NCBI GenBank assembly: GCA_002269645.1
Contig: NIVC01000024.1
Location: 620,001-684,000 of the forward strand
Reading direction: 5' to 3'
DNA from: Macrostomum lignano
Taxonomy: Eukaryota
Length of the DNA: 64,000 nucleotides
Below, one piece after another: positions 1 through 14,014 of this stretch. Under the pieces are notes generated by a model that was not told the DNA's origin, made no database searches, and saw only the letters and a list, made by a program, of their open reading frames with translations. Position 1 is the stretch's first letter. The number at the start of each line of letters is the position of its first letter. The translations under genes and the position numbers were made by a program.

Positions 1-39
1 CACTATGCCCTAATCTTTCTTCGCTCATCTGGCCTTTGA

Positions 40-1960
<1,921 letters not shown>

Positions 1961-3976
1961 CGATGCAGTGGTGCAGGAGTGGCCATGCAGGATGTCAACT
2001 CCTACAATTGTGGTCCGCGCAGCTTCATGCCAATTGCCATTAAGGACAACTAGAAGTTACAAAAAAAATAAAAAACAACGGTAACTTCTAGTGGTCCTTG
2101 CTTCCTGCTGGCTCAGGGCGAGTTGTGCAGGAGAGCTGCCTCATTGTTGGGAATACATAAATAAACTAAAATTAGCTCATAAAATTAATGTGGTCCCTAA
2201 TTATCCCCTTGCTTATTCTCCCCTATTCCAAGTCCAAATTTTGTCGGTTTTTGCCAAACCCAGCTTTCTGGTATCACTGTGAGCAGAATGATGTATCATT
2301 TGTGTACATAAGCGGCTCGGGCTCCATTTTTATGAGCTTATAAGTGTGGTTGACAGGCCCTAATGTATTTACAAGTCATTTACGTTTATATGATATAAAT
2401 TGTATTATATAAATCGAGAATAGCTAGATCACGCAAACTATTAGTACATATATCTGAATCTTATTGGTGATTGATTTGATAGGTGAGAGCATCGATCGGT
2501 GATGATTACTGAGGGCGATGTACATGCAACGCAGTACAAAGTACCAAGAGTCGTCACCAAAAACTCATAACAGTAAGAGTATATACAGTTAGAATAAAAA
2601 ATCAAAAATAAGTTTGCAGCTCTCACATTTCTTGCGAATTCACGTTGAAATTTTTGTTATAACGTTTATTAACAAAATTTTGCATTAACTTTCAATTAAA
2701 TTTGACTTTGTAACAAAGTTTCCTATTTCAAGATTATTTCTGAATTTTTTACAATGTCCATTCGGCATTCACCATAATAGACCATTTGACGAGCCAATGG
2801 ACTTCAAGTGAGAGCGTGAGTGCAATATTACACGAAGTCATTGACTTTAACTCGAAGTACGAGTACATAACATAGCACTTAAAACAACAAATAATAGCTA
2901 AAGCCTATAGTCATTTTGCTTTAGCTTTATCTTCCCTGAAGGCTGAGTTAACCACTCAATAGTTATAGTTGTGGGCATAAACCACACGAGCGCTAATGAA
3001 TGATACTCCCGAAAGTCTCCTTTTTTAATTTTGACGCTTCTACAATTCGTTTTTTTCAATCTCGCTAGTTATTCTTGGCAATAAAAATATTCTAATGACA
3101 GAATTATTACTATGAATGATTGTTATTATTATGATACTTAATCTATAATGGAATTTAGTTGCCTTACAGAATTATAGCTAATGGTTAACCTAATTTATGT
3201 CCTGTTTTAAAAAGGGGCCTATTTTGTGTGTCTTGGCCTAAGTTAATAGGCTTGTTATTTTCCACTTGTTTGATATTTTATGTATAATATTTTCTCTGTG
3301 CATATTTTATAGAATTCTTCTATTTGAAAAATTTTGCAGCCTTATGCTATACCTGGTTTTATTAATTTACCAAAAAGCTACTCTTAGTAAAATAAAAGTT
3401 GCATAAGTAAACTAAATTATAAAATGTATTATTTATATTTTCTATTGACTTTGATGCTTAACAGTATATGACATAGAATAGAAAAGATTGGGATCTCTAG
3501 CTCATATTTAATATATATTTATAGGTTCAAATTAATTTCCATGTAATTAATCCTACTTTAAGTTTTAAATTTAAACTTAAGCATATAAAATATGTCCCTT
3601 TTAAGAAGATTGCAATGGTATAAACTTTTAACATGTCTTATTAGCAAGTAATATTAAAATCAGGTATGAAAAAACTATGCAATTAAAGTATAAATTAGGC
3701 TTAAAAGATAGACCACTAATCTATAATATTATATTACACTTTTAGATAACATTAATCTATGAAGCCAATAGTCAAGTTTTGGGACTTAGTCTGTTTTGTT
3801 AGGAATTCTAGGCCCTATTAAGATGTTTAGCTAATAGACTTTAAAAAATTTTAACTGAGTATTTCGATAAGCTAAAAGTGGCAATTATTAGTTGATAATA
3901 GGGCTTAAAATCCATTAAATTGAAAGATTTCACTGCAAGTTTGTCAAATTGATAATATAAAATTTATGCCGCTAAG

Positions 3977-4729
3977 ATGGAATCAAGGGCAAAGGAGTTC
4001 TGGAAACCAGAATGGAAAATAAAGGATGAATTCACGCAAAGAACGAATGAAAAAATTGACCAAAATGAGACAATGAACTCAACTGACACAGTGATTCTTG
4101 AAGGTCGCGAGTTCGCCGTTCATCCCGGCGTTTTCTCGCCATCAATTTTCATCGGGTCGAAATTTTTGTGCAACAAGCTGTGCGAGTTCCTGCCGGACTC
4201 TGGCACCTTTCTTGAAATCGGCAGCGGCTGCGGTTGCGTGGCAGTTCTGGTGGCTCAGAATCGGCCTCGGCTTCGCATATTTGCCGTCGACATCAGTCAG
4301 AGTGCGTTGGAGAACACGCTGGAGAATCTGAAGCGTCACCGACTCACTGACAGGGTGAAGGTCACCCAGAGTGACGTCATGGACGCCTTCGTTGACGCGG
4401 GAGAAGTCGAGAAGTTTGACTGCGTCTTCTGGAACTATCCGTTTCATCACACAGACAAGTCGATCGGTCAGCTGACAATGACCGAACGCGCCATTCGCGA
4501 TCCGAACTACGCCTGCCTGCACAAACTGTTTGATCAGGCCAGCCAACTAGTGTCGCCTGGCGGGAAAGTCCTGATCGGATTTTCTATTAAAATGGGCATT
4601 GTCGAGGCTCTGGTAGCCATAGCTAGGCATTACGGTTGGCAAACGCAAGAGAAAGCAAACGGGCTTGACTTTGAAGGAGAGAAGACTTCGATGGCCATCT
4701 TTGAGTGCGTTCGGTTCAATGACGCTTGA
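3977..4729 (+). CDS. Class I SAM-dependent methyltransferase (MTS/PrmC-HemK-like), intronless, 250 aa
   Basis: Clean ATG-to-TGA ORF. Motif I FLEIGSGCG, acidic motif VDISQSAL, SDVMDAF, motif IV FDCVFWNYPF (NPPY-like), and LVSPGGKVLIGF. Confidence 0.9.
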   Translation: MESRAKEFWKPEWKIKDEFTQRTNEKIDQNETMNSTDTVILEGREFAVHPGVFSPSIFIGSKFLCNKLCEFLPDSGTFLEIGSGCGCVAVLVAQNRPRLRIFAVDISQSALENTLENLKRHRLTDRVKVTQSDVMDAFVDAGEVEKFDCVFWNYPFHHTDKSIGQLTMTERAIRDPNYACLHKLFDQASQLVSPGGKVLIGFSIKMGIVEALVAIARHYGWQTQEKANGLDFEGEKTSMAIFECVRFNDA

Positions 4730-5271
4730 TGACTAACGAATGGAGAATTCACTAGTGACGAGACAGTGAGCATAAACTGGCCCTATCTATTAGCAATAGT
4801 ATAGTTATAGTAGTATTTTACAGCCAAGTATATTTTTTAAACTTTTTTATTTGACAGACAGTGAGGAAAAGCACTTCAACTCAATGTTGTCAAGAGTTGC
4901 CAATGTCTTGTCATTTTTTATCATCTTTACACCTTCAAAGCTACCGGTTGCTTTTGGTGCTGTAAAGGATACAGTAATACAGGTTTGAGTTTGTTTTGAG
5001 CACTGGTCACGCTCATAGAAAATCTTGAGTCCATGGAAACCCATGTTAATTAACTTCTAAGAGTTAAATTTCTTTATAAGAGTCTTCTATGAAAATGAAT
5101 CCAATTATGACAAGTCTTAGTCAACTTTGCTGTCAAAATCTATACAAGATTTTCCTTATATAAATTTTTTTTTTATTTTGACACATTGTCAACTATTTTC
5201 GATGCACACGTACAGCAACGGGACTAAAATTTTACGTAATTACAACCTACATAGCAATACAGAGTCTTGAT

Positions 5272-5346
5272 GTTCTCCACCTGAGCGTCGGTGAACAACA
5301 GCAGGTAGCAGTCTCTCAGCTTGCTATTGTACAGCACGTACCTGCT
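5272..5346 (-). pseudogene. Fragment of a paralog of the C-type lectin/PAN gene (3' portion), inverted
   Basis: The reverse complement reads YVLYNSKLRDCYLLLFTDAQVE versus HVLYNSKLRACRLLLFTDAQVE at ~7378-7443. The flanks do not continue the homology. Confidence 0.75.
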
Positions 5347-6102
5347 GTAACGCAGTGCGTTTTTGCTAAAATCGATCACACATACCGACAGACCATTTTT
5401 AGTATATTGGACTAGCAATCAGCGTCCATCGTTGAGGAGACAAGATTTAATGGAATAATTGTTTTAATCTTTGAGTCTTTGCATCTGCAGCAATTCATCT
5501 AAAATACAACAGAGTATACTGTTTCGGATGCTAAATTAAAGAAGTGATCATCTTCACTTGCCCCGGATCAAATGCAGTCGTTGATTTTGTGATTAAAAAA
5601 TTATTTCCATCCCTAATCTTCGCAGTTTAGCTATTTTTTTAGGAAATTGGCCTCCAAAAACTTACACGATCTTAAAAGTTTTTTGTCCTGTTATACTACA
5701 GTAAAATAACCATCAGCCAGGAGGTTGTTGTCACCAAACCATCCAGATATTGTCTAAACTGACTGATACAGACAGAATTGCATGCTTATTTAGCAACTGA
5801 AAGCTAGTAGCGACTCTCGTCAAACCCAGTCAACGGAAGAAGGTGGACGGGCAAGCGAGTCAACAGATCCGGTTTTCGATTCCGCGCTTGCATAGACTCC
5901 AAAACCAACATGAGCTGATATAGCGGACTGGCTGAAAGGCGGGAAAACCTACATGTATTTAAGGTGGAAAGGAAGTCAGGCGGCGCGAAGTATAGTCAAC
6001 AGTCACCCAGCAAAGCTGACAAATCATTTTTGGAAGCAAGCAAAGCATGTTTCCTGCGAGTTCACTCATTTCCGGAAAAAATTACTAGCATTAGAATTCG
6101 GT

Positions 6103-6185
6103 ATGAGGCTGCAGCAGTCCCTGGACCTGCTGTCGTGTCCCCGCACCGTTTCACACCCCTGCAGGCTGGTCTGTGCCTGTTCACA
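6103..6185 (+). pseudogene. Frameshifted fragment resembling the 5' part of the C-type lectin gene
   Basis: ctgcagcagtccctggacctgctgtcgtgtccccgcaccgtttcacacccctgcaggctgg aligns with ctgcagtcgcagggcctgccgtgtcccgcaccgttcaccatgcaggctgg at ~6808-6858, with indels. Confidence 0.6.
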
Positions 6186-6562
6186 CCGTTGTTTGCGGGT
6201 GGTTCGGTTGAATCACTTCTTTAAATCGATTTTTTTTGCTCCGTCGACAACCTTTAATCCATAAATTGATCCCATTAGCTCGTAAATAATGCTTTTATAG
6301 GTTTTATTATTTCACAGGTAGACATGCATGCAGAGACAGAGGCTTTTCTTGTTTACAGAGGTTGCTTGAGCGTCTGCAGCGTCTCCCAGTCTCAAATGCT
6401 CGCAACCACATTAATGTGCAAACTTGAACAGCCTCAGCTTCTGGGTACTGCACTGCTTGGAGTGTAAGTTAAGTTAGAGCCAAGCTTTGATTAGTCAGGC
6501 GGGACAGACAGATTCCGATTCGAGAGAGAAGCCTCAATGCTACTAGATGGACTTGAGCGTTA

Positions 6563-6606
6563 AGCCAATGATGGGAGCAGTCAGAGGTACAAGATCGGCT
6601 ATTTAA
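6563..6606 (+). promoter_or_regulatory. Possible CCAAT and TATA-like core promoter of the lectin gene
   Basis: agccaatga at ~6563 and tatttaag at ~6600, about 160 nt upstream of the ATG. Motif match only. Confidence 0.3.
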
Positions 6607-6763
6607 GATACGCCTGACGCTGGCTGAATGCGTCTTAATTCATTGTAGAGACGCCACAGTTTTGCACCTTGAGCATTGGTAACGTTTGCCCCGGGAGTGG
6701 AACTATTTTCTAATTAGGAAAACAGCAGAAGAGCACCCAATCTATAATTTGTGAGCGTCAATA

Positions 6764-7492
6764 ATGCAGCCATTGCTGCTGCTGCTGCTCCTACTGAGAT
6801 GCCAGCTGCTGCAGTCGCAGGGCCTGCCGTGTCCCGCACCGTTCACCATGCAGGCTGGACGGTGTTTTTTTGTGAGCACAGCTCACAACAACAGCTGGTG
6901 CTCAGCCAATCGGCAGTGCGCATCGATCGGAGGCGAGCTCGTCAACTCGCACAGCTCCATCCAGAAGTTTCGAAAAGGGAGAATCCGCGATGCCAACTGT
7001 AGCTGCGACCTGTGGGTCGGGCTGAGTGACCTGGCTGATGAGAGAAACCGGAACAGAGCCGGCTGGCAGAGGGTCAACCGACACGGCATCTTCCCGGAGG
7101 ACGGCAGCCTGTTTAGGAACAATGAGCCGAATGGCGGAGTTATCGCCAACTGCCTCCGACTGCACAACGGCAGTTACTTGGCTGACAAAAGTTGCAAATC
7201 GAACTTCGGGTTCGCCTGCGAGCTCACGGCCGGTGCCCGACCACCGACTGCCGGCGTCTGGACGCCTACCGCCTTCAATCGCCAGAGCTTCAACTCCGAG
7301 TACTGCTTCACCGATGTGCTGAATGTGAGCAGCTCTTTTGAATGCGTTGCAGCCGCTATGATTGACGGCAGCTGCAGACACGTGCTGTACAACAGCAAGC
7401 TGAGAGCCTGCCGCCTGCTGCTGTTCACCGACGCTCAGGTGGAGGCGGAGATCGAGACGAGCGCCGACTGGGTCAAACTGCAACTGGTCTAA
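6764..7492 (+). CDS. Secreted C-type lectin domain protein with C-terminal PAN/apple-like domain, intronless, 242 aa
   Basis: Leu-rich signal peptide. CTLD with CPAPF..GRCF, W..A...C, LWVGLSD, EPN motif, CL and C..NFGFACE. A second Cys-containing module follows (ECVAAA...CRHVLYNSKLRACRL). Confidence 0.9.
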   Translation: MQPLLLLLLLLRCQLLQSQGLPCPAPFTMQAGRCFFVSTAHNNSWCSANRQCASIGGELVNSHSSIQKFRKGRIRDANCSCDLWVGLSDLADERNRNRAGWQRVNRHGIFPEDGSLFRNNEPNGGVIANCLRLHNGSYLADKSCKSNFGFACELTAGARPPTAGVWTPTAFNRQSFNSEYCFTDVLNVSSSFECVAAAMIDGSCRHVLYNSKLRACRLLLFTDAQVEAEIETSADWVKLQLV

Positions 7493-8053
7493 CATTACTG
7501 CTTGGATTTTCCTTTTGAAAAAATATTTAAGATCTTATCGATTCGCAAATCGACTTACAAAAAGACACGAATAAAACGGCGTTTGCACGAAACGGATGTG
7601 CAACTAGAGAACAAGGACGATCGGAAATTTTCGGCAAAGTTTCAGCTCTTCCTGTCTCTCTATTGTACTTTTCTAGCGAGGAATTATTCTATGGCAAAAC
7701 TCCATCCAGCTCTGTTTAGAAAACGCAACTGTACATGTCATACAAGTTAAGTCAACGTATAAAATTCAGATAGGTAGAGGTGACGTGTATGCAAAAAAGT
7801 AGGACAGCAAATTAAATAACGCACAGCGACACACTATCACTGCTTTGCTCTAAACTGTTGAAAATATCAACGGCGAACCAACAGCGCTGATTACGAGCAC
7901 AGATACCACGAAAGATTAGTAGTGAGCTCGAACTAAGCTGAGACTCGGACTTATAAGGTTTTTCGTAGCCTTTAATTCGAGCTTTCAAGTGAGAAGTGTT
8001 TTCAAACTGCAATCACAGTACATGGTGAACAGCTGCAGGTGCACAATAATCGC

Positions 8054-11000
8054 ATGGCTCTGGAACGTACCAGCAACAGCTTCCACTGGGCAGACTACGT
8101 CATCCTAGTCTTGTCGTTGCTCATTTCGTGCTCAGTGGGGATCTACTTTGCCTTGTCGGGTGGCAAGCAGAAGACAACAGCCGAGTATCTCATGGGAGAT
8201 CGCAGCATGAGACTGGTGCCAGTGTCTGTGTCTCTGGTGGCCAGCTTCCTGTCCGCCATCCTCATCCTGGGCCATCCGGCCGAGATCTACCTGAACGGCA
8301 TTGGGTTTCACTTTCACCTGATCGGCGCAACCATTGCGTACCTGACGACAGCGTTTCTGTTCGTTGGACTGTTCTATCAGCTGCGAATAACCAGCGCCTT
8401 CGAGGTAACTGGAGGCATTTTTTGATAAAGCTGTTTGTAGTTATTTCGTGCGGGTCTGCGACTGTCGCAATTTGATTGCCAGTGACAATTTGACTGTCAG
8501 TGACAATTGACTGTCAGTTGACAATTCACTGTCAGGTGACAATTCACTGTCAGGTGACAATTCACTGTCAGTGACAATTGACTGTCAGTAACAATTGACT
8601 GTCAGTGACAATTGACTGTCAGTGACAATTGACTGTCAGTGACAATTGACTTTCAGGTGACAATTGACTGTCAGTGACAATTGACTGTCAGGTGACAATT
8701 GACTGTCAGTGACAATTGAGGTGACAATTGCCTGTCAGTGACAATTGACTGTCAGTGACAATTGACTGTCAGGGGAAAATTTGACTGTCAGTGACAATTG
8801 ACGGTATCCTACGCCTTTTCGTATGTCACGGATTTCTGCTACAGACACTATCGCACTGCTCAAACCAAACCCATCTCAAACACTCAAACCAGTATCTGGA
8901 GCAGAGATTCCAATCTAAGCTGGTGCGCTGCATCGGGACCCTCCTGAATTTGGTCATCATGGTAAGTCATAGCGAGTTGGTACAATTAATAAAATCGAAT
9001 TTGCTGTACTAACTGATTAAAACAAGATGCATTTCAGATCATGTACGCCGGGAGTGCCATATTTGCACCATGCACAGCCACTGAGAGAGGTAACAAAATT
9101 ATTCGGCACCTATTTTATGAATCTATATTAGAGGAATTAAAAACAAAACATGCAAGGACTACTCAAGTAGCATATACAGGATGCAACACTCGATATCTGT
9201 GGTAAATGTTTTGAAGGCAACTTTTCGCCGAAAATACACTACGGAGATAGGAAATATCACGATTTTCAACACTAAAACAGTGATTGGGTCTCTTAACAGT
9301 GTCAGAGAAAGTTCTAATCACACTATTCTGTGCCTCACATGCTGCTCTAATGACGCATTAATCGATTTTTCATGTTAAATTGGTCTCGTCATTATTTTTA
9401 AAGTTTTCTCAAATGAAGCTTTATGAATATCGATAGAGCTATAAGAAAGGCACAACATATCAAAAGATGAACACTGGATCTGCCTCCTATCCAAAGCAAT
9501 AACAATTTTTATGCTGAAAAAATTAAAACCTCCTATCTCTGTAGTGTATTTATAGATTTCGAGTGTTGCGTCCTTTTACTTAAGTTGTCCTTGTACATGT
9601 GAAAGTCAACAGTCAAGGATGGTAGAGAAGTTGGATGGAGAAGAATGAAGGGAGAAAAGCTCACGGATAGGAAGAGTGCACGGATGGGGAAGGAATGGAA
9701 AAGTGGACAGTGTGTTCAGAATACAGGGGAGCAAGAGCATCTCCCAGCGGCCCATTCTCCACTGCAACCACTTGCAGTCACGGACAGCGCAGTCCGTCGC
9801 GAGTACGTGATAGCCGCCTGCGGCATAATCGGCACTTTTTACACTCTGCTCGGCGGCATGAAGGCGGTGGTGTGGGTTGACGCCATTCAAGCTGGCATCA
9901 TGCTGGCTGGCACTGTGGCGGTTGCTGTCAAGGTGATCAACTACCTGAGTCTCCACGGTCTTTTAGTATTGTGACATGAGCAGAGTTGGAAATGAAGATT
10001 TGAGCTTGTGAATATTGGAGCTTGTGAAGATTGGGCTTGCGAAGATTGTAACCTGTGAAGATTGAGGCTTGTGAAGATTGAGGCTTGTGAATATTGGAGC
10101 TTGTGAAGATTGAGGCTTGTGAATATTGGAGCTTGTGAAGATTGGAGCTTGTGAAGATTGGAGCTTGTGAAGATTGGAGCTTGTGAAGATTGGGGCTTGT
10201 GAAGATTGGAGCTTGTGAAGATTGGGGCTTGTGAAGATTGGAGCTTGTGAAGATTGGGGCTTGTGAAGATTGGAGCTTGTGAAGATTGGAGCTTGTGAAG
10301 ATTGGGCTTGTGAAGATTGGGGCTTGTGAAGATTAGAGCTTGGGAAGATTGTAGGTTGTGAAGATTGGAGCTTGTGAAGATCGGAGCTTGTGAAGATTGT
10401 AAGTTGTGAAGATTGGACCTGTGAAGATTGGGCTTGTGAAGATTGAAGCTTGTGAAGATTGAAGCTTGTGAAGATTGAAGCTTGTGAAGATTGGAGCTTG
10501 TGAAGATAGGAGCTTGTGAAGATTGGGGCCTCTGAAGTCTCGTGCTTGTAAAGTTTAGAAATTCACCAGCAGATGTCCCGAGCATTCTCTTTACAGTTTT
10601 CTTTCATATCCCTCAGGCCGTGGTTGATTCAGGCGGGTTTGGCCAAATGTGGCAGCTGAACATGGACTACGGCAGGCTGCAGTTGCCACCGCTGACTGCG
10701 GACCCGAGGGAGCGCCACTCGCTGTGGGGCATGATCTTCGGCCAGGCGATGTACTGGCTGATTCAGGTGGCCGTTAGTCAGCCGTCTGTGCAGCGGTACT
10801 GCTCACTGCCAAGTCTCCGAGCTGCTAAGTTGTGAGAACTGATGAGCTCTTTGAGCTTCTTGTCGGTGTCTAAGGCTTGTAGCCCAGTGGTAAGAGCGTC
10901 GGGTTCACGACTGGAAGGTCGGGGGTTCGATTCTCAACCTACTCGGAACAACTTGTGTCTTTAAGCTTAACTCTGCATTGCTTCAGTTCACCCAGCTGTA

Positions 11001-11160
11001 AAATGGGTGCCAGCATTAGCTGGGGTAATTGAGGCTGTGTGTGGCGACCCCCCCCCCAGTCCTTGGACTGAACAGCCGTACGCAGCCTTCAGATGCGCCG
11101 CGCAATAGCTGCGGCTGAGATGTCGGTTGCACATCTGGCACATTGGGACAGGCGTAATCA

Positions 11161-11191
<31 letters not shown>

Positions 11192-14014
11192 TTTTATTGT
11201 TTCTAGGAATATTTGAAGGCTTGAGATTCAAGGTTAATGGGATAAAAGAAACAGCCTGTTTATCGGTTTTCTGTGTGGCTGTTTCATTCCTTTAACTACA
11301 TGGCTGTCTGTCGAAAGAACAATTTCATATTGAGTTTATAGTCAACAAGTACCTGCGCTTTAAAAAATCAATAAGAGCAAGGCTCGCTTGTATTGAAAAT
11401 CATCACATTATGTAGATAAACTAAATAATCAAAAACATGCTTCTTAAAACAACCCAGCTCCCTTAATAAACGCGCGAACTCCTAAGTAGACTGTCAATAA
11501 ACACACCTTCTTGATTAGTACACCTTAATGATTACAACAAAATCTAAACACGCCTGAATATAAACACAAATAAATAAATACACACGTAAATTTAAACACA
11601 ACAAAATATAAACACATTTGAATATAAACACAACAAAATATAAACACATTTGAATATAAACACAATTTAAACGCACCTAAAAGGCACAACTCCGTGATAA
11701 ACAACCCCAGCAACGCCATCCCGCAGGAGCGTGGTGTTCGGCCTCGTCGGCCACTGGATCATGGTCAGCGTGTGCACCCTGGTGGGGCTGGCGATCTTCG
11801 GCCGCTACGCCTCCGTGGCCTGCGACATTCACGCGGCAGGCTGGGCGGACACCAACCAGATCGTCACCTACTACGTGATGGAGCGCATGAGCGTACCCGG
11901 ATTTCCGGGTTTGTTCACGGCCGCTCTGCTGGCTGCCGCTCTGTCGTCAGTGTCCTCGTCGCTGAGCTCCGTGTCCACCATCGCCTGGACCGACCTGCTG
12001 CGGCCGTACGCGTGCAAGAAGGTGACCGACGGTGCACCTTGGCAACCGATCTGCTATATTGTTTATAAAGTTATCCTATATATTGTTTAAAACCTCCCCT
12101 GCCAGCACCAAACCTAAACGAAAGCCTACACCAATATCTACTAAACCTACACCAGAACCTACTAGACCTACACCAGAACCTACTAGACCTACACCAGAAC
12201 CTACTAGACCTACACCAGAACCTACTAGACCTACACCAGAACCTACTAGACCTACACCAGAACCTACTAGACCTACACCAGAACCTACTAGACCTACACC
12301 AGAACCTACTAGACCTACACCAGAACCTACTAGACCTACACCAGAACCTACTAGACCTACACCAAAACCTTCCAGCTGCCAGAATCCCGGGCTACACTGG
12401 TTGCCAAGTCGCTGGTAGCCGCAGCCGGTCTCCTCAGCACGGCGGTGGCGTACATCGTGGCCCAGTTAGGCGGCACCATCATCCAGGCGGTGACCACATT
12501 CCTAGGCGCGGCGGCGGGCCCCAGCGTCGGCTTGTTCCTTCTTGGCTGCCTGTTCCCTTGCGCCAACTGGCTCGGGGCCGCGGTGGGCCCCCTGGTGGGC
12601 CTGGCCTGCTCCATGTGGATCGGCATCGGGGCCTACAGTATCAGCAGGGAGAATGTGAGACTGCCCGCCAATATCACCGGCTGCCAGTTGGAACAGCAGT
12701 TCTCTACTACCGATACTACTGCTGCTAGTAGTATCATGACGAGCAGCCTGGACTGGGGCAGCACAGAGGGAGGATTGACTGAGAAGTCTTCAAGCGGGTG
12801 AGCCTGTAGATGCCAACCTGCAGACGGAGAAGCTGTGTGAGTGTGAGCTGGGGAAGTGTGAGCTGTGTGAAGGGTGTGAACTGTGTGAAAGGAGTGTGAG
12901 CTGTGTGAACGGAGTTGTCGGGGGAGGGTGTGGTGAGTCAGGGAGAGTGTGGGGTCCAGGAGGGTTTGAAGAGTCGGGGAGGGTGTGGTGAGTCAGGGAG
13001 AGTGTGGGGAGTCCAGGAGGGTTTGGGGAGTCGGGGAGGGCGTGGGAGTTTGGGAGGGTGTGGGGAGGCAGGGGGTGGTTAGTCGTGGAGTGTGTTGGGA
13101 GGCAGGGAGTGTTTGGTGGAAGTCCGTGAGGGCTTGGGGAGTCCGGGAGGGTGTGGGGAGAGAGAGTGCGGGGAGGCGGGGAGGGTGTGGAGAGGTGGGG
13201 AGGTTATGGGGAGTTGGTGAGGGTGTGAGGAGTTAGGGAGGATATGGGGATGCAGGGGGGTGGGGAGTCGGGGAGGGTGTGGGGAGGCAGGGGGTGGGGA
13301 GTCGGGGAGGGTATGGTGAGGCAGGGGATGGGGAGTCGGGGAGGGTGTGGGGTATCGGAGAGGGTGTGGGGAGGCAGGGGGGTGGTTAGTCGGAGAGGGC
13401 GTGGGGAGGCAGGGGGTGGTTAGTCGGAGAGGGCGTGGGGAGGCAGGGGGTGGGGAGTCGGGGAGGGTGTAGGGAGGCAGGGGGTGGTTAGTCGGAGAGG
13501 GTGTGGGAATGTTAAAATGGAATCAGTGGGAAACGCCAGAACAAATCACAAACGCACCAAATTCACCCAGGTTTCTTCAAGAGTACATCTACACAATCAG
13601 CTACGTGTGGACCCCAGTCGTGGGTGTTCTGGTCACAGTGTCTGTTGGACTTGTCTGCAGCTGCTTGAGTAAGTGCTGCAGATACTACTCATACTTAGTA
13701 GCAGGCATCTTCATCCCAATCCAGCCTCATTTCCTGTCTCTGCCGTCATTAAAGCCCGGCGCAGCTCGTGGCTGAAGTGCGGCATCGAGCCGATAAAAGT
13801 ACAACGCCGACATCTGCTGGCCGGCGTGGCTCGCCTGTACGAGGCGGCGGGCTGCGGAGGCTGCTTGGCGAAGGATGAGGCGGCGGGGGTGGGCAATCAG
13901 GAGGCTGAGGATGGCAACCTGGAGAAAAGAAGGAGCAAGTCTGCGGTGGGAGCTCGGGTTCATGTAAGCAGCTGGTTGCGGTTGATGTTATTGATGTTAT
14001 ATGATCATCGCTGA
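8054..14014 (+). CDS. Sodium:solute symporter, SLC5A8/A12/A6-like (SMCT/SMVT group), multi-exon
   Basis: GT-AG exons join in frame: 8054-8404, 8893-8961, 9038-9089, 9778-9932, 10617-10831, 11727-~12021, ~12376-12797, 13571-13668, ~13725-14014. Boundaries of exons 6/7 and the last exon are uncertain. SSS motifs: [94 protein letters not shown]. Confidence 0.9.
8481..8802. repeat. ~17-bp near-palindromic minisatellite (gtgacaattgactgtca) in SLC5 intron 1
   Basis: Tandem units are directly visible. Confidence 0.95.
9994..10530. repeat. ~16-bp minisatellite (gaagattggagcttgt) in an SLC5 intron
   Basis: Tandem units are directly visible. Confidence 0.95.
10875..11190 (+). mobile_element. tRNA-derived SINE (family A) with CORE-like central domain and (ATT)n tail
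   Basis: Box A tagcccagtggtaagagc, box B ggttcgattc, central cagttcacccagctgtaaaatggg, and an (ATT)n tail. A second copy lies inverted at 53244-53557. Confidence 0.85.
12130..12365. repeat. 21-bp near-perfect minisatellite (cctacaccagaacctactaga) in an SLC5 intron
   Basis: About 11 units that end just before the acceptor. Confidence 0.95.
12835..13505. repeat. G-rich degenerate tandem repeat (ggggagtcggggagggtgtggggaggca) in an SLC5 intron
   Basis: Recurrent G-runs are directly visible. Confidence 0.9.

What the first reader, a model, noticed from the sequence alone, without database searches (positions are those of the whole stretch)
3977..4729. Intronless methyltransferase that looks bacterial: candidate horizontal gene transfer
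Seen: an intact, intronless, GC-richer ORF in very AT-rich flanks. Motif IV is FWNYPF rather than the NPPY of animal HEMK1/N6AMT1. From memory, the run 'PGVFSP…FLEIGSG…DIS..ALEN…N..RH…V.V..SD…FD..FWN..F…DP.Y…GG..LIGFS' resembles actinobacterial and other bacterial PrmC-like methyltransferases, several of them found in secondary-metabolite loci. I have not searched this. Inference: a bacterial gene domesticated in an animal, possibly methylating small molecules or peptides.
Basis: partly seen in the sequence, partly recalled or inferred. Interest (0 to 1): 0.7.

Follow-up and report, generated by a model that had tools for sequence, protein, structure and literature searches.

The report
Foreign-type methyltransferase gene in a flatworm
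The flatworm Macrostomum lignano carries an intact, intronless and apparently working methyltransferase gene from an uncharacterised, mostly bacterial and plasmid-borne family, so it very probably arrived by horizontal transfer, but its closest relatives sit in a few other microscopic eukaryotes and no bacterial donor can be named.

Summary
Window 3977-4729 (+) is an intact 250-aa single-exon ORF (GC 0.51) in AT-rich flanks, with motif IV reading FWNYPF.

It is a real Macrostomum lignano gene, not a contaminant. Two collinear versions of the locus, 0.7-3.3% divergent, both place it between animal genes. The GenBank gene model is RNA-seq-derived, and the two copies differ by 4 synonymous and 1 conservative change.

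The protein belongs to an uncharacterised subfamily of the MTS/HemK-like class I methyltransferases, with the signature FD-x-IFWN-x-PF. No solved structure or curated family model exists for it. It is not PrmC, N6AMT1 or RsmC.

The family is overwhelmingly prokaryotic (CPR, DPANN, Chlamydiae, Bdellovibrionales, Actinobacteria) and often sits on conjugative plasmids. The few eukaryotic members are scattered and intronless, including bdelloid rotifers.

The worm gene's nearest relatives are three other eukaryote-borne genes. Likelihood placement gives zero weight to any prokaryotic branch, and rooting is unresolved. Foreign origin is well supported; a direct transfer from an actinobacterium is not.

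The likely function is N-methylation of an amide or amine nitrogen, probably on a small molecule. That is inferred, not shown.

The parts
3977..4729 (+). Complete single-exon CDS (250 aa plus stop) of the methyltransferase. It corresponds to GenBank BOX15_Mlig010635g1, which differs by one residue (K236R).
   Evidence: AlphaFold2 model pLDDT 91.9
4124..4141 (+). PGVFSP (residues 50-55), the conserved N-terminal motif. V52, F53 and P55 are invariant or nearly so in the family; the motif is also seen in RsmC/RlmG-type enzymes.
   Evidence: RsmC alignment
4211..4234 (+). Motif I, LEIGSGCG (residues 79-86), the glycine-rich SAM-binding loop. G82, G84 and G86 are invariant.
4283..4297 (+). Motif II, AVDIS (residues 103-107). 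D105 is the acidic residue at the end of strand 2 that binds the SAM ribose in class I methyltransferases.
   Evidence: D105 nearly invariant; role inferred from established class I MTase knowledge
4367..4378 (+). Motif III, QSDV (residues 131-134). S132 and D133 are conserved.
4415..4444 (+). Motif IV and family signature, FDCVFWNYPF (residues 147-156). N153 and P155 are invariant and W152 is nearly invariant. It is the counterpart of (N/D)PP(Y/F/W) in amino/amide N-methyltransferases.
   Evidence: pattern FDxI[FY]W[NA]xP[FW]
4484..4510 (+). Family-specific ERAIRDPNY (residues 170-178). D175, P176 and Y178 are conserved.
4559..4585 (+). GGKVLIGFS (residues 195-203), a conserved strand. G196 and S203 are nearly invariant.
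6764..7492 (+). Host context: C-type-lectin-domain ORF 2 kb downstream on the same strand.
   Evidence: Pfam Lectin_C 6.3e-5; collinear in the second version of the locus
8039..12801 (+). Host context: multi-exon sodium:solute symporter (SLC5-type) gene, with exon-like ORFs at 8039-8425, 9645-9974, 11731-12090 and 12445-12801.
   Evidence: Pfam SSF hits; an SSF gene model spans the locus in GenBank

Best explanation
The ORF is a genuine, transcribed and selectively constrained nuclear gene of Macrostomum lignano. It encodes a SAM-dependent methyltransferase of an uncharacterised subfamily of the MTS/HemK-like class I superfamily, with the signature P-x-VF-x-P ... LE-x-G-x-G-x-G ... FD-x-IFWN-x-PF ... 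ERA-x-x-DP-x-Y ... GFS.

The subfamily is essentially prokaryotic and mobile, so the worm gene is ultimately of foreign (horizontal) origin. It belongs to a small clade of intronless genes carried by unrelated microscopic eukaryotes. The immediate donor could therefore be a bacterium related to the donors of those genes, or another eukaryote; it cannot be named.

Mechanism (inferred): the Rossmann-fold core binds SAM through motifs I-III. The N-x-P-F motif IV presents a substrate -NH2 (amide, carbamoyl or amine nitrogen) for methyl transfer, as in PrmC, N6AMT1, RsmC and the carbamoyl N-methyltransferase Asc-Orf2. The substrate is more likely a small molecule or peptide than RNA or DNA.
For: Integration and reality:
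- The gene lies on a 744-kb contig of GCA_002269645.1.
- The window and that contig are two collinear versions of the locus, 0.7-3.3% divergent. Both have the order retroelement remnant, methyltransferase, lectin, SSF gene, with no N runs.
- GenBank gene models for this assembly are purely RNA-seq derived (PMC5730564).
- The two copies differ by 4 synonymous and 1 conservative change, dN/dS about 0.07. The chance of one or fewer replacements among 5 random changes is about 0.01.
- GC3 is 0.60 against 0.71-0.87 in host exons, and RSCU correlates at r = 0.59.

Family:
- 5630 cluster representatives at E < 1e-3 and 524 at E < 1e-10, sharing FD-x-IFWN-x-PF.
- 234 loci in GTDB genomes across CPR, DPANN, Chlamydiae, Bdellovibrionales, Gammaproteobacteria and Actinobacteria.
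- All other organism-named hits in the two name-bearing homolog searches are prokaryotic; cluster look-ups added only Rotaria and one EukProt entry.
- 56 plasmids carry relatives, 49 of them conjugative.
- P0005 (37% identity) lies inside an F-type conjugative element.

Eukaryotic members are few, intronless and split into separate clusters: Rotaria, a 2.46-Mb eukaryotic contig, a protist that reads through stop codons, and EukProt.

Worm clade:
- Reciprocal best hits with P0002 and P0003.
- ML clade {Mlig, P0037, P0002, P0003} has local support 0.93.
- Placement likelihood weight is 1.00 within that clade.

Function:
- Confident model, pLDDT 91.9.
- Best fold match is the carbamoyl N-methyltransferase Asc-Orf2 (9l4q), then PrmC and N6AMT1.
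- Family members are fused to a carbamoyltransferase, GTP cyclohydrolase II, an SGL/regucalcin-like lactonase and a YdcZ exporter.
- The family is acidic, median pI 5.4.
- Actinobacterial copies sit beside biosynthetic-type genes.
Against: - No named bacterial clade contains the worm gene. The best confirmed prokaryotic match is only 36% identical.
- Monophyly of all eukaryotic members cannot be rejected: the critical branch has delta lnL 0.8 and support 0.50.
- PrmC and RsmC outgroup fragments attach, diffusely, to the worm clade's own long branches (likelihood weight 0.24 or less). Taken at face value, that would make the clade basal rather than nested.
- My ML program is home-made (BLOSUM62-derived rates, NNI only, local supports).
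- The source organisms of P0002 and P0003 are unidentified.
- Transcription is inferred from how the annotation was built, not from reads I saw.
- The substrate inference is indirect. Prokaryotic gene neighbourhoods are not conserved, many members live in CPR and DPANN genomes that have little secondary metabolism, and the PGVFSP and N-x-PFH motifs also resemble rRNA m2G methyltransferases.
Confidence: 0.68

Rival explanations
1. Direct, fairly recent transfer from a bacterium into the Macrostomum lineage, followed by domestication.
For: The family is prokaryote-dominated and plasmid-borne. In the unrooted ML tree, Actinobacteria lie on the same side of a 0.83-0.94 split as the eukaryotic clusters. 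The gene is intronless.
Against: The closest sequences are eukaryote-borne, not bacterial. Actinobacterial members are only 31-37% identical. The gene's composition already resembles the host's, which argues against a recent event. The worm protein scores 232 bits against a 7-sequence eukaryotic profile and 193 against the 80-genome prokaryotic profile, while every prokaryotic control prefers the prokaryotic profile by 77-136 bits.
Confidence: 0.12
2. An ancient eukaryotic (or metazoan) gene inherited vertically and lost in almost all lineages. On this reading the prokaryote-like appearance only reflects poor eukaryotic sampling.
For: The nearest relatives are eukaryotic. Eukaryote monophyly is not rejectable. 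PrmC and RsmC outgroups attach near the worm clade.
Against: Among annotated animals only bdelloid rotifers have members, and theirs fall in a different cluster that is no closer to the worm gene (32-35%) than bacteria are. The eukaryotic clusters are as far from each other as from prokaryotes. All eukaryotic copies examined are single-ORF genes, in hosts that otherwise have introns. The family is abundant, diverse and mobile in prokaryotes. Outgroup placements are diffuse and mutually inconsistent, as expected from long-branch attraction.
Confidence: 0.1
3. Assembly contaminant or chimera: bacterial DNA mis-joined to worm DNA.
For: The ORF has a compact, intronless, bacterial look and a sharp GC step at its borders.
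Against: Two independently diverged versions of the locus carry the gene in the same animal context. There are no gaps. No bacterial neighbour genes are present; the flanks are an AT-rich spacer, lectin, SSF and a retroelement remnant. The gene model is RNA-seq based. Codon bias leans toward the host's. The closest relatives are eukaryotic.
Confidence: 0.02
4. Functional rival: the enzyme acts on the translation apparatus like its distant relatives, methylating protein glutamine-N5 (PrmC/N6AMT1-like) or rRNA guanine-N2 (RsmC/RlmG-like), rather than a small molecule.
For: The best NCBIfam hits are PrmC and PrmB. PGVFSP and N-x-PFH resemble RsmC's PGVFS and NPPFH. PrmC and N6AMT1 are among the top fold matches. 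The family is common in reduced CPR and DPANN genomes.
Against: All scores are far below family cutoffs: 69.7 against 199.1 for PrmC, 42 against 295 for RsmC. The protein lacks PrmC's N-terminal substrate domain and RsmC's duplicated domain, with only two short N-terminal helices. The family is acidic and patchy, plasmid-borne and accessory in distribution. Its fusions are with small-molecule enzymes and an exporter. The worm presumably keeps its own HEMK/N6AMT1 orthologs (not tested).
Confidence: 0.2

Closest known systems
PrmC/HemK release-factor N5-glutamine methyltransferase (TIGR03534; PDB 2b3t, 1nv8)
   Same: Class I Rossmann fold, the same order of motifs I-IV, an N-x-P-aromatic motif IV that binds an amide NH2, and a PrmC-like 'xRPxxxhxAVD' stretch after motif I. 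It is a top-3 fold match.
   Different: It scores 69.7 bits against a cutoff of 199.1. Motif IV is W-N-Y-P-F rather than NPPY. It has no approximately 70-residue N-terminal helical substrate domain. The family-specific ERA..DP.Y and GFS motifs are absent from PrmC.
Carbamoyl N-methyltransferase Asc-Orf2 (PDB 9l4q), an actinobacterial natural-product tailoring enzyme
   Same: It is the best structural match (Foldseek E 3.6e-13, TM 0.61-0.75) and is also a small single-domain 'methyltransferase small domain' protein. Carbamoyl-N methylation is chemically analogous to glutamine-amide methylation, and one family member is fused to a carbamoyltransferase.
   Different: Sequence identity is only 16-17%. 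The query scores E 0.39 against it and the family profile scores 52 bits, so it is not the same subfamily.
Animal N6AMT1/HEMK2 (KMT9)-TRMT112 and HEMK1
   Same: They belong to the same superfamily and have an N-methyltransferase motif IV. TM-score normalised to the target is about 0.75.
   Different: E 0.11 (15 bits) against N6AMT1, and TIGR00537 gives 29.6 bits against a cutoff of 87. They are clearly not orthologous. A TRMT112 partner requirement is unknown.
RsmC/RlmG rRNA m2G methyltransferases (PDB 2pjd, 4dcm)
   Same: RsmC (2pjd) is the best single-sequence PDB hit (3e-6). They share the PGVFS motif and N-P-P-F-H, compared with N-Y-P-F-H here.
   Different: 42 bits against a cutoff of 295. 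There is no duplicated N-terminal domain, and the protein is acidic.
Foreign (HGT-derived) intronless genes of bdelloid rotifers
   Same: Rotaria sordida and Rotaria sp. Silwood1 carry intronless members of this same family on rotifer contigs. This is the same kind of event in another microscopic animal.
   Different: The rotifer copies form a separate cluster (32-35% identity to the worm gene) and are not its closest relatives.

Membership tests
Pfam MTS (PF05175) / class I SAM methyltransferase | Profile score above the gathering cutoff, with the glycine-rich motif I and acidic motif II present | tested here: met
   68 bits against a cutoff of 23; LEIGSGCG and D105 are present; the model shows a Rossmann-like alternating strand/helix fold, pLDDT 91.9
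Uncharacterised 'FWN-x-PF' MTS subfamily (no curated model) | Signature P-x-VF-x-P, FD-x-IFWN-x-PF, ERA..DP.Y and G..L..GFS over about 220 aa, with a high score to profiles built without the query | tested here: met
   All invariant columns are present. The query scores 232 bits against a eukaryote-only profile and 193 bits against an 80-genome prokaryote profile, neither of which includes it.
PrmC/HemK (TIGR03534) | Score at or above the equivalog cutoff of 199.1 | tested here: not met
   69.7 bits
PrmC/HemK (TIGR03534) | NPPY catalytic tetrapeptide | tested here: not met
   The sequence reads N153-Y154-P155-F156. N, P and an aromatic residue are kept but the tetrapeptide differs.
PrmC/HemK (TIGR03534) | N-terminal helical substrate-recognition domain | tested here: not met
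   Only two helices (residues 2-8 and 17-31) precede the core.
N6AMT1/HEMK2/MTQ2 (TIGR00537) | Score at or above the cutoff of 87; orthology to the animal proteins | tested here: not met
   29.6 bits; E 0.11 against human N6AMT1 chains
RsmC/RlmG rRNA m2G methyltransferases | Score at or above the cutoff (295 / 468); two-domain architecture | tested here: not met
   42 and 22.8 bits; single domain
MADS defence system Mad2 (PADLOC PDLC04134) | Full-length match to the 492-position profile | tested here: not met
   66.5 bits over profile positions 272-395 only, which is the generic methyltransferase core
Horizontally acquired gene in an animal | Physical integration among host genes | tested here: met
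   Two diverged collinear versions of the locus with lectin, SSF and retroelement-remnant flanks, on a 744-kb contig with no gaps
Horizontally acquired gene in an animal | Absence from related animals, with a family centred in another domain of life | tested here: met
   An exhaustive HMMER search of 1.84 billion representatives, plus name look-ups, found M. lignano and bdelloid rotifers as the only animals identified among the hits whose source could be determined. Most of the top 150 hits are unlabelled metagenome or run-assembly sequences. All other named hits are prokaryotic except one EukProt protist transcript.
Horizontally acquired gene in an animal | Phylogenetic nesting inside a donor clade | tested here: inconclusive
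   ML tree and placement put it in a eukaryote-borne clade (0.93; likelihood weight 1.0). The sister relationships have support of 0.67 or less, and rooting is inconsistent.
Horizontally acquired gene in an animal | Expression and selective constraint in the host | tested here: inconclusive
   The gene model comes from an RNA-seq-only annotation. There are 4 synonymous changes to 1 replacement between copies. I did not inspect reads, and the sample of substitutions is small.

The most novel reading that the evidence does not exclude
The FWN-x-PF methyltransferases are a mobile, plasmid- and symbiont-borne accessory family that microscopic eukaryotes have captured repeatedly and independently: a flatworm, bdelloid rotifers, a protist with reassigned stop codons, and others. 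In some hosts the gene has been welded to a regucalcin-like lactonase or a DMT exporter. The same selective benefit would drive each capture, for example N-methylation that neutralises or produces an amide- or carbamoyl-bearing small molecule met in microbial mats. On this reading the worm gene is one instance of convergent acquisition of a chemical-defence or detoxification enzyme of a still unknown type.
Probability: 0.2. Interest if true: 0.6.

Novelty: new member of a known kind. Interest (0 to 1): 0.42.

Why it matters
Well-documented, expressed genes of prokaryotic ancestry are still rare in flatworms, and M. lignano is a transgenic, RNAi-amenable model, so the function of such a gene can be tested directly. 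The case also shows why alien-index reasoning needs care. The family is prokaryotic, yet the nearest relatives are other eukaryotes, so donor and direction cannot be read from top hits alone. Finally, it flags a large family (thousands of clusters, common in CPR, DPANN and on conjugative plasmids) that has no structure, no curated model and no known substrate.

Tried and rejected
- The word-index homolog search with the single protein found only itself. The exhaustive HMMER search was needed.
- The NJ tree with Kimura distances gave no useful support. No phylogeny software is installed, so I wrote an ML/NNI/placement program.
- Outgroup rooting with PrmC, RsmC and MJ0882 fragments was inconsistent, and I do not rely on it.
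- The metagenome scan with a worm-clade profile found nothing closer than 33%.
- The viral-contig scan found no relatives, so there is no evidence for a viral vector.
- The conserved-neighbourhood scan of 144 flanking genes in 80 prokaryotic loci showed no recurrent partner.
- No terminal or inverted repeats or mobile-element structure surround the worm gene.
- Literature searches for the sample accessions, the gene ID, Asc-Orf2 and Macrostomum HGT found nothing specific. SRR22100204 is not from the M. cliftonense/M. hystrix project.
- The bacterial promoter/terminator scan around the gene was uninformative.
- The PADLOC mad2 hit matches only the generic core.
- Megablast of the P0005 conjugative element against PLSDB found no match.
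Full report
**1. Observation**

Window 3977-4729 (+) is an uninterrupted ATG-to-stop ORF of 250 aa.
- GC is 0.51-0.52 inside the ORF, 0.23-0.27 in the kilobase upstream and 0.33-0.38 downstream.
- The contrast in composition is not itself a foreign signature. Neighbouring host exons have GC 0.54-0.65 in a window whose median is 0.47.
- Lack of introns is unusual for this genome, which averages 4.9 introns per gene (PMC5730564).

**2. Source and physical context**

- A near-identical protein (one residue different) is GenBank 'hypothetical protein BOX15_Mlig010635g1, partial [Macrostomum lignano]'. It lies on the 744-kb contig NIVC01000260.1 of GCA_002269645.1.
- The neighbours are animal genes: a C-type-lectin ORF (6764-7492) and a multi-exon sodium:solute symporter (from 8039). 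Upstream is what looks by eye like a non-LTR retroelement remnant; Pfam gave no hit for it.
- The window is not the same sequence as the GenBank contig. The two are collinear over at least 13 kb but differ by 0.7-3.3% plus many indels and repeat-number changes. The published assembly contains 180 Mb of duplicated blocks at 95% identity or more, which fits.
- Two independently diverged versions of the locus therefore both carry the gene in the same animal context, with no N runs. This effectively excludes contamination or a chimeric join.
- No repeats or mobile-element structure flank the gene.

**3. Is it used?**

- GenBank models for this assembly were built only from RNA-seq: StringTie/TACO, a mapped de novo transcriptome, TBONE and TransDecoder. 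The existence of Mlig010635.g1 therefore implies transcription. I did not see reads.
- Between the two versions the CDS has four third-position synonymous changes and one conservative replacement (K236R). That gives dN/dS of about 0.07, and the chance of one or fewer replacements among five random changes is about 0.01.
- The adjacent lectin gene, by contrast, has 24 differences, most of them amino-acid changes.
- GC3 (0.60) and codon usage (RSCU r = 0.59) lean toward host usage.

**4. Protein family**

- Pfam gives MTS (PF05175, 1e-18).
- NCBIfam's best hits are PrmC (69.7 bits, cutoff 199.1), PrmB, HemK-family, TrmN and RsmC, all far below their cutoffs.
- PDB sequence hits are weak: RsmC 3e-6 and N6AMT1 0.11.
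- The exhaustive HMMER search found 5630 cluster representatives at E < 1e-3, 524 at E < 1e-10 and 9 at E < 1e-30.
- Most share the signature FD-x-IFWN-x-PF along with P-x-VF-x-P, motif I, ERA..DP.Y and GFS.
- A profile of the family hits no PDB entry above superfamily level: MJ0882 69 bits, HemK 65, an apramycin N-methyltransferase 64.5, Asc-Orf2 52, GenN 52.
- This is therefore a distinct, uncharacterised subfamily. FWNYPF is a family trait, not a peculiarity of the worm gene.

**5. Who has it**

- A pattern scan of 185,579 GTDB species genomes gave 234 confirmed loci. They fall in Patescibacteria/CPR, DPANN archaea, Chlamydiae, Bdellovibrionales, Gammaproteobacteria, Myxococcales, Longimicrobium, Streptomyces, Amycolatopsis, Lentzea and Pseudonocardiaceae. 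The best match is 36% identical, from a Pseudobdellovibrionaceae MAG.
- All other organism-named hits in two further homolog searches are prokaryotic.
- tblastn against PLSDB found relatives on 56 plasmids, 49 of them conjugative: diatom-associated Pseudosulfitobacter, rhizobia and Streptomyces.
- P0005, one of the closest bacterial relatives (37%), lies inside an F-type conjugative element.
- No viral relatives were found.

Eukaryotic members exist but are few:
- Rotaria sordida and Rotaria sp. Silwood1, on rotifer contigs next to a neprilysin-type peptidase gene.
- P0004 and P0022, from a 2.46-Mb eukaryotic contig with TMEM144, NPHP3-type TPR and Arp2/3 p21 neighbours.
- P0037, from a 62-kb contig whose USP5 and EF-hand genes read through in-frame TAG/TAA codons, so its host is a protist with reassigned stop codons.
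- P0079, a EukProt transcript fused to a YdcZ exporter.
- P0002, a transcript-like contig fusing the methyltransferase to a domain most similar to animal regucalcin (171 bits against mouse and human proteins).
- P0003, a GC-rich lone ORF with more than 500 nt of ORF-free, lower-GC flank on each side.

Every eukaryotic copy examined is a single ORF.

**6. Phylogenetic position**

- All-vs-all BLASTP shows at least three separate eukaryotic clusters:
  - Cluster A: M. lignano, P0002 and P0003, which are reciprocal best hits.
  - Cluster B: Rotaria with P0004, P0022, P0028 and P0092.
  - Cluster C: P0079 with P0282.
  - Each cluster is about as far from the others as from prokaryotes.
- The worm protein scores 232 bits against a profile of seven other eukaryotic members and 193 bits against the profile of 80 prokaryotic genomes. 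All twelve prokaryotic controls prefer the prokaryotic profile by 77-136 bits.
- No tree software was installed, so I wrote an ML program: BLOSUM62-derived reversible rates, 4 gamma categories, NNI search and RELL local supports.
- For 53 taxa and 227 columns (lnL -20264.9), the tree gives:
  - {M. lignano, P0037, P0002, P0003} with support 0.93.
  - That clade joined to {P0079, P0282, P0009} with support 0.67.
  - Actinobacteria joining next with support 0.50 and delta lnL 0.8.
  - A split with support 0.83-0.94 that separates Actinobacteria plus all eukaryotic clusters (and P0005 at the 0.94 level) from the CPR, DPANN, Chlamydiae and Bdellovibrionales bulk.
- When the worm sequence is removed and re-placed, it attaches only within its eukaryote-borne clade (likelihood weights 0.83, 0.14, 0.03) and never on a prokaryotic branch.
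- Rooting with PrmC, RsmC and MJ0882 fragments is diffuse and contradictory. PrmC and RsmC go to the long cluster A branches, which probably reflects long-branch attraction, and MJ0882 goes to the CPR group.
- An alien-index style comparison gives ln(8.2e-28) - ln(2.3e-33) = about 13. This compares the best identified non-self animal hit (Rotaria P0023, itself a likely foreign gene) with the best confirmed prokaryotic hit (P0007). The value is positive but below the usual thresholds.
- Conclusion: foreign ancestry at the family level is well supported, but the donor, the direction and the number of transfers are unresolved.

**7. Mechanism**

- The AlphaFold2 model is confident (pLDDT 91.9, pTM 0.91) and shows a single Rossmann-type domain preceded by two short helices.
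- The best Foldseek hit is the carbamoyl N-methyltransferase Asc-Orf2 (9l4q, E 3.6e-13), followed by PrmC-RF1, N6AMT1/KMT9, TrmM, RsmC and RlmG.
- It is established for these enzymes that the (N/D)-P-P-(Y/F/W) motif hydrogen-bonds a substrate -NH2. The invariant N153 and P155 and the aromatic F156 fit that role here. This step is inferred.
- Evidence favouring a small-molecule or peptide substrate:
  - Family fusions to a NodU/TobZ-type carbamoyltransferase, GTP cyclohydrolase II, an SGL lactonase, a DMT exporter and an NB-ARC/TPR NTPase.
  - An acidic family, median pI 5.4, with the worm protein at 5.7.
  - An accessory, plasmid-borne distribution.
  - Ketosynthase, AMP-binding, Trp-dioxygenase, FAD-oxidoreductase and ABC-exporter neighbours in Actinobacteria.
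- Evidence against: gene context is not conserved overall, many hosts are CPR and DPANN, and the motifs resemble those of RsmC.
- I put small-molecule or peptide N-methylation at roughly 0.5-0.6 and a translation-apparatus substrate at about 0.2.

**8. Verdict**

The gene is of foreign type, integrated and apparently functional. It is not demonstrably from Actinobacteria, and it is part of a small eukaryote-borne clade.
- Novelty: a new member of a known kind, namely an HGT-type gene in an animal and an uncharacterised branch of a known superfamily.
- Interest is moderate.

Noticed in passing
window 5224-5418 (-), esp. 5275-5345: An inverted, 90%-identical copy of the 3' end of the lectin ORF (7374-7444) lies just downstream of the methyltransferase gene. 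The minus-strand ORF reads '...VLYNSKLRDCYLLLFTDAQVE', so this is a fragment or diverged paralog of the C-type lectin gene.
   Followed up: partly
window 6764-7492 (+): The C-type-lectin gene differs at 24 nucleotides between the two versions of the locus, giving about 17 of 242 amino acids changed. That is far more replacement than in the methyltransferase gene 2 kb away, so the lectin is fast-evolving or under diversifying selection.
   Followed up: partly
window 8472-8802, 9993-10537, 12125-12370, 12921-13507: Tandem arrays sit within the symporter gene region: 17-nt x19, 16-nt x34, 21-nt x12 (which translates as PTPEPTR repeats) and a G-rich 19/34-nt array. Their copy numbers differ between the window and the GenBank version of the locus, and the 16-nt array causes the GC-skew spike at about 10.0-10.5 kb.
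   Followed up: partly
window 357-1998 (-): This is a GC-rich (0.55-0.65) block of overlapping minus-strand ORFs. By eye they resemble the RT C-terminus and RNase H part of a non-LTR retrotransposon, but Pfam gave no hit at E 0.01.
   Followed up: partly
L001 (GenBank NIVC01000260.1:438782-459540) vs window 1-13111: The window is a second, 0.7-3.3% divergent, collinear version of the GenBank locus: a homeolog, haplotype or other assembly. In GenBank, an SSF gene model with a 652-aa product spans the whole 20.7-kb locus on the same strand, so the methyltransferase and lectin genes may lie inside that model's range, either nested or as part of a polycistronic transcriptional unit.
   Followed up: partly
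L094 (JGI 3300075940, Ga0633762_000759), e.g. 9991 and 3964-4128: The contig that carries P0037, the likeliest sister of the worm gene, has in-frame TAG/TAA codons inside clearly conserved USP5 (UCH/UBA) and EF-hand coding sequence. Its host is therefore a eukaryote with reassigned stop codons, possibly a ciliate.
   Followed up: partly
L082 (Logan SRR22100204 contig, 140-1774): The worm gene's best hit (42-43% identity) is a 544-aa fusion of this methyltransferase with an SMP-30/regucalcin-like domain that is closest to the mouse and human proteins. The EukProt member P0079 is fused to a YdcZ-type DMT exporter instead.
   Followed up: partly
L100 / L101 (ENA metagenome contigs carrying P0005): A close bacterial relative sits in an F-type conjugative element with TraL/E/K/B/C, TraD, a MobA-TraI relaxase, ParA, a ParDE/YafQ-type toxin-antitoxin pair, DsbB and a Vut_1 transporter. 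Megablast found no match in PLSDB, so the element is not among described plasmids.
   Followed up: partly
P0045 (1075 aa, metagenomic): One family member has the methyltransferase as the N-terminal domain of an NB-ARC/NACHT plus TPR STAND NTPase. That architecture is typical of conflict or immunity proteins, where the N-terminal domain is the effector.
   Followed up: no
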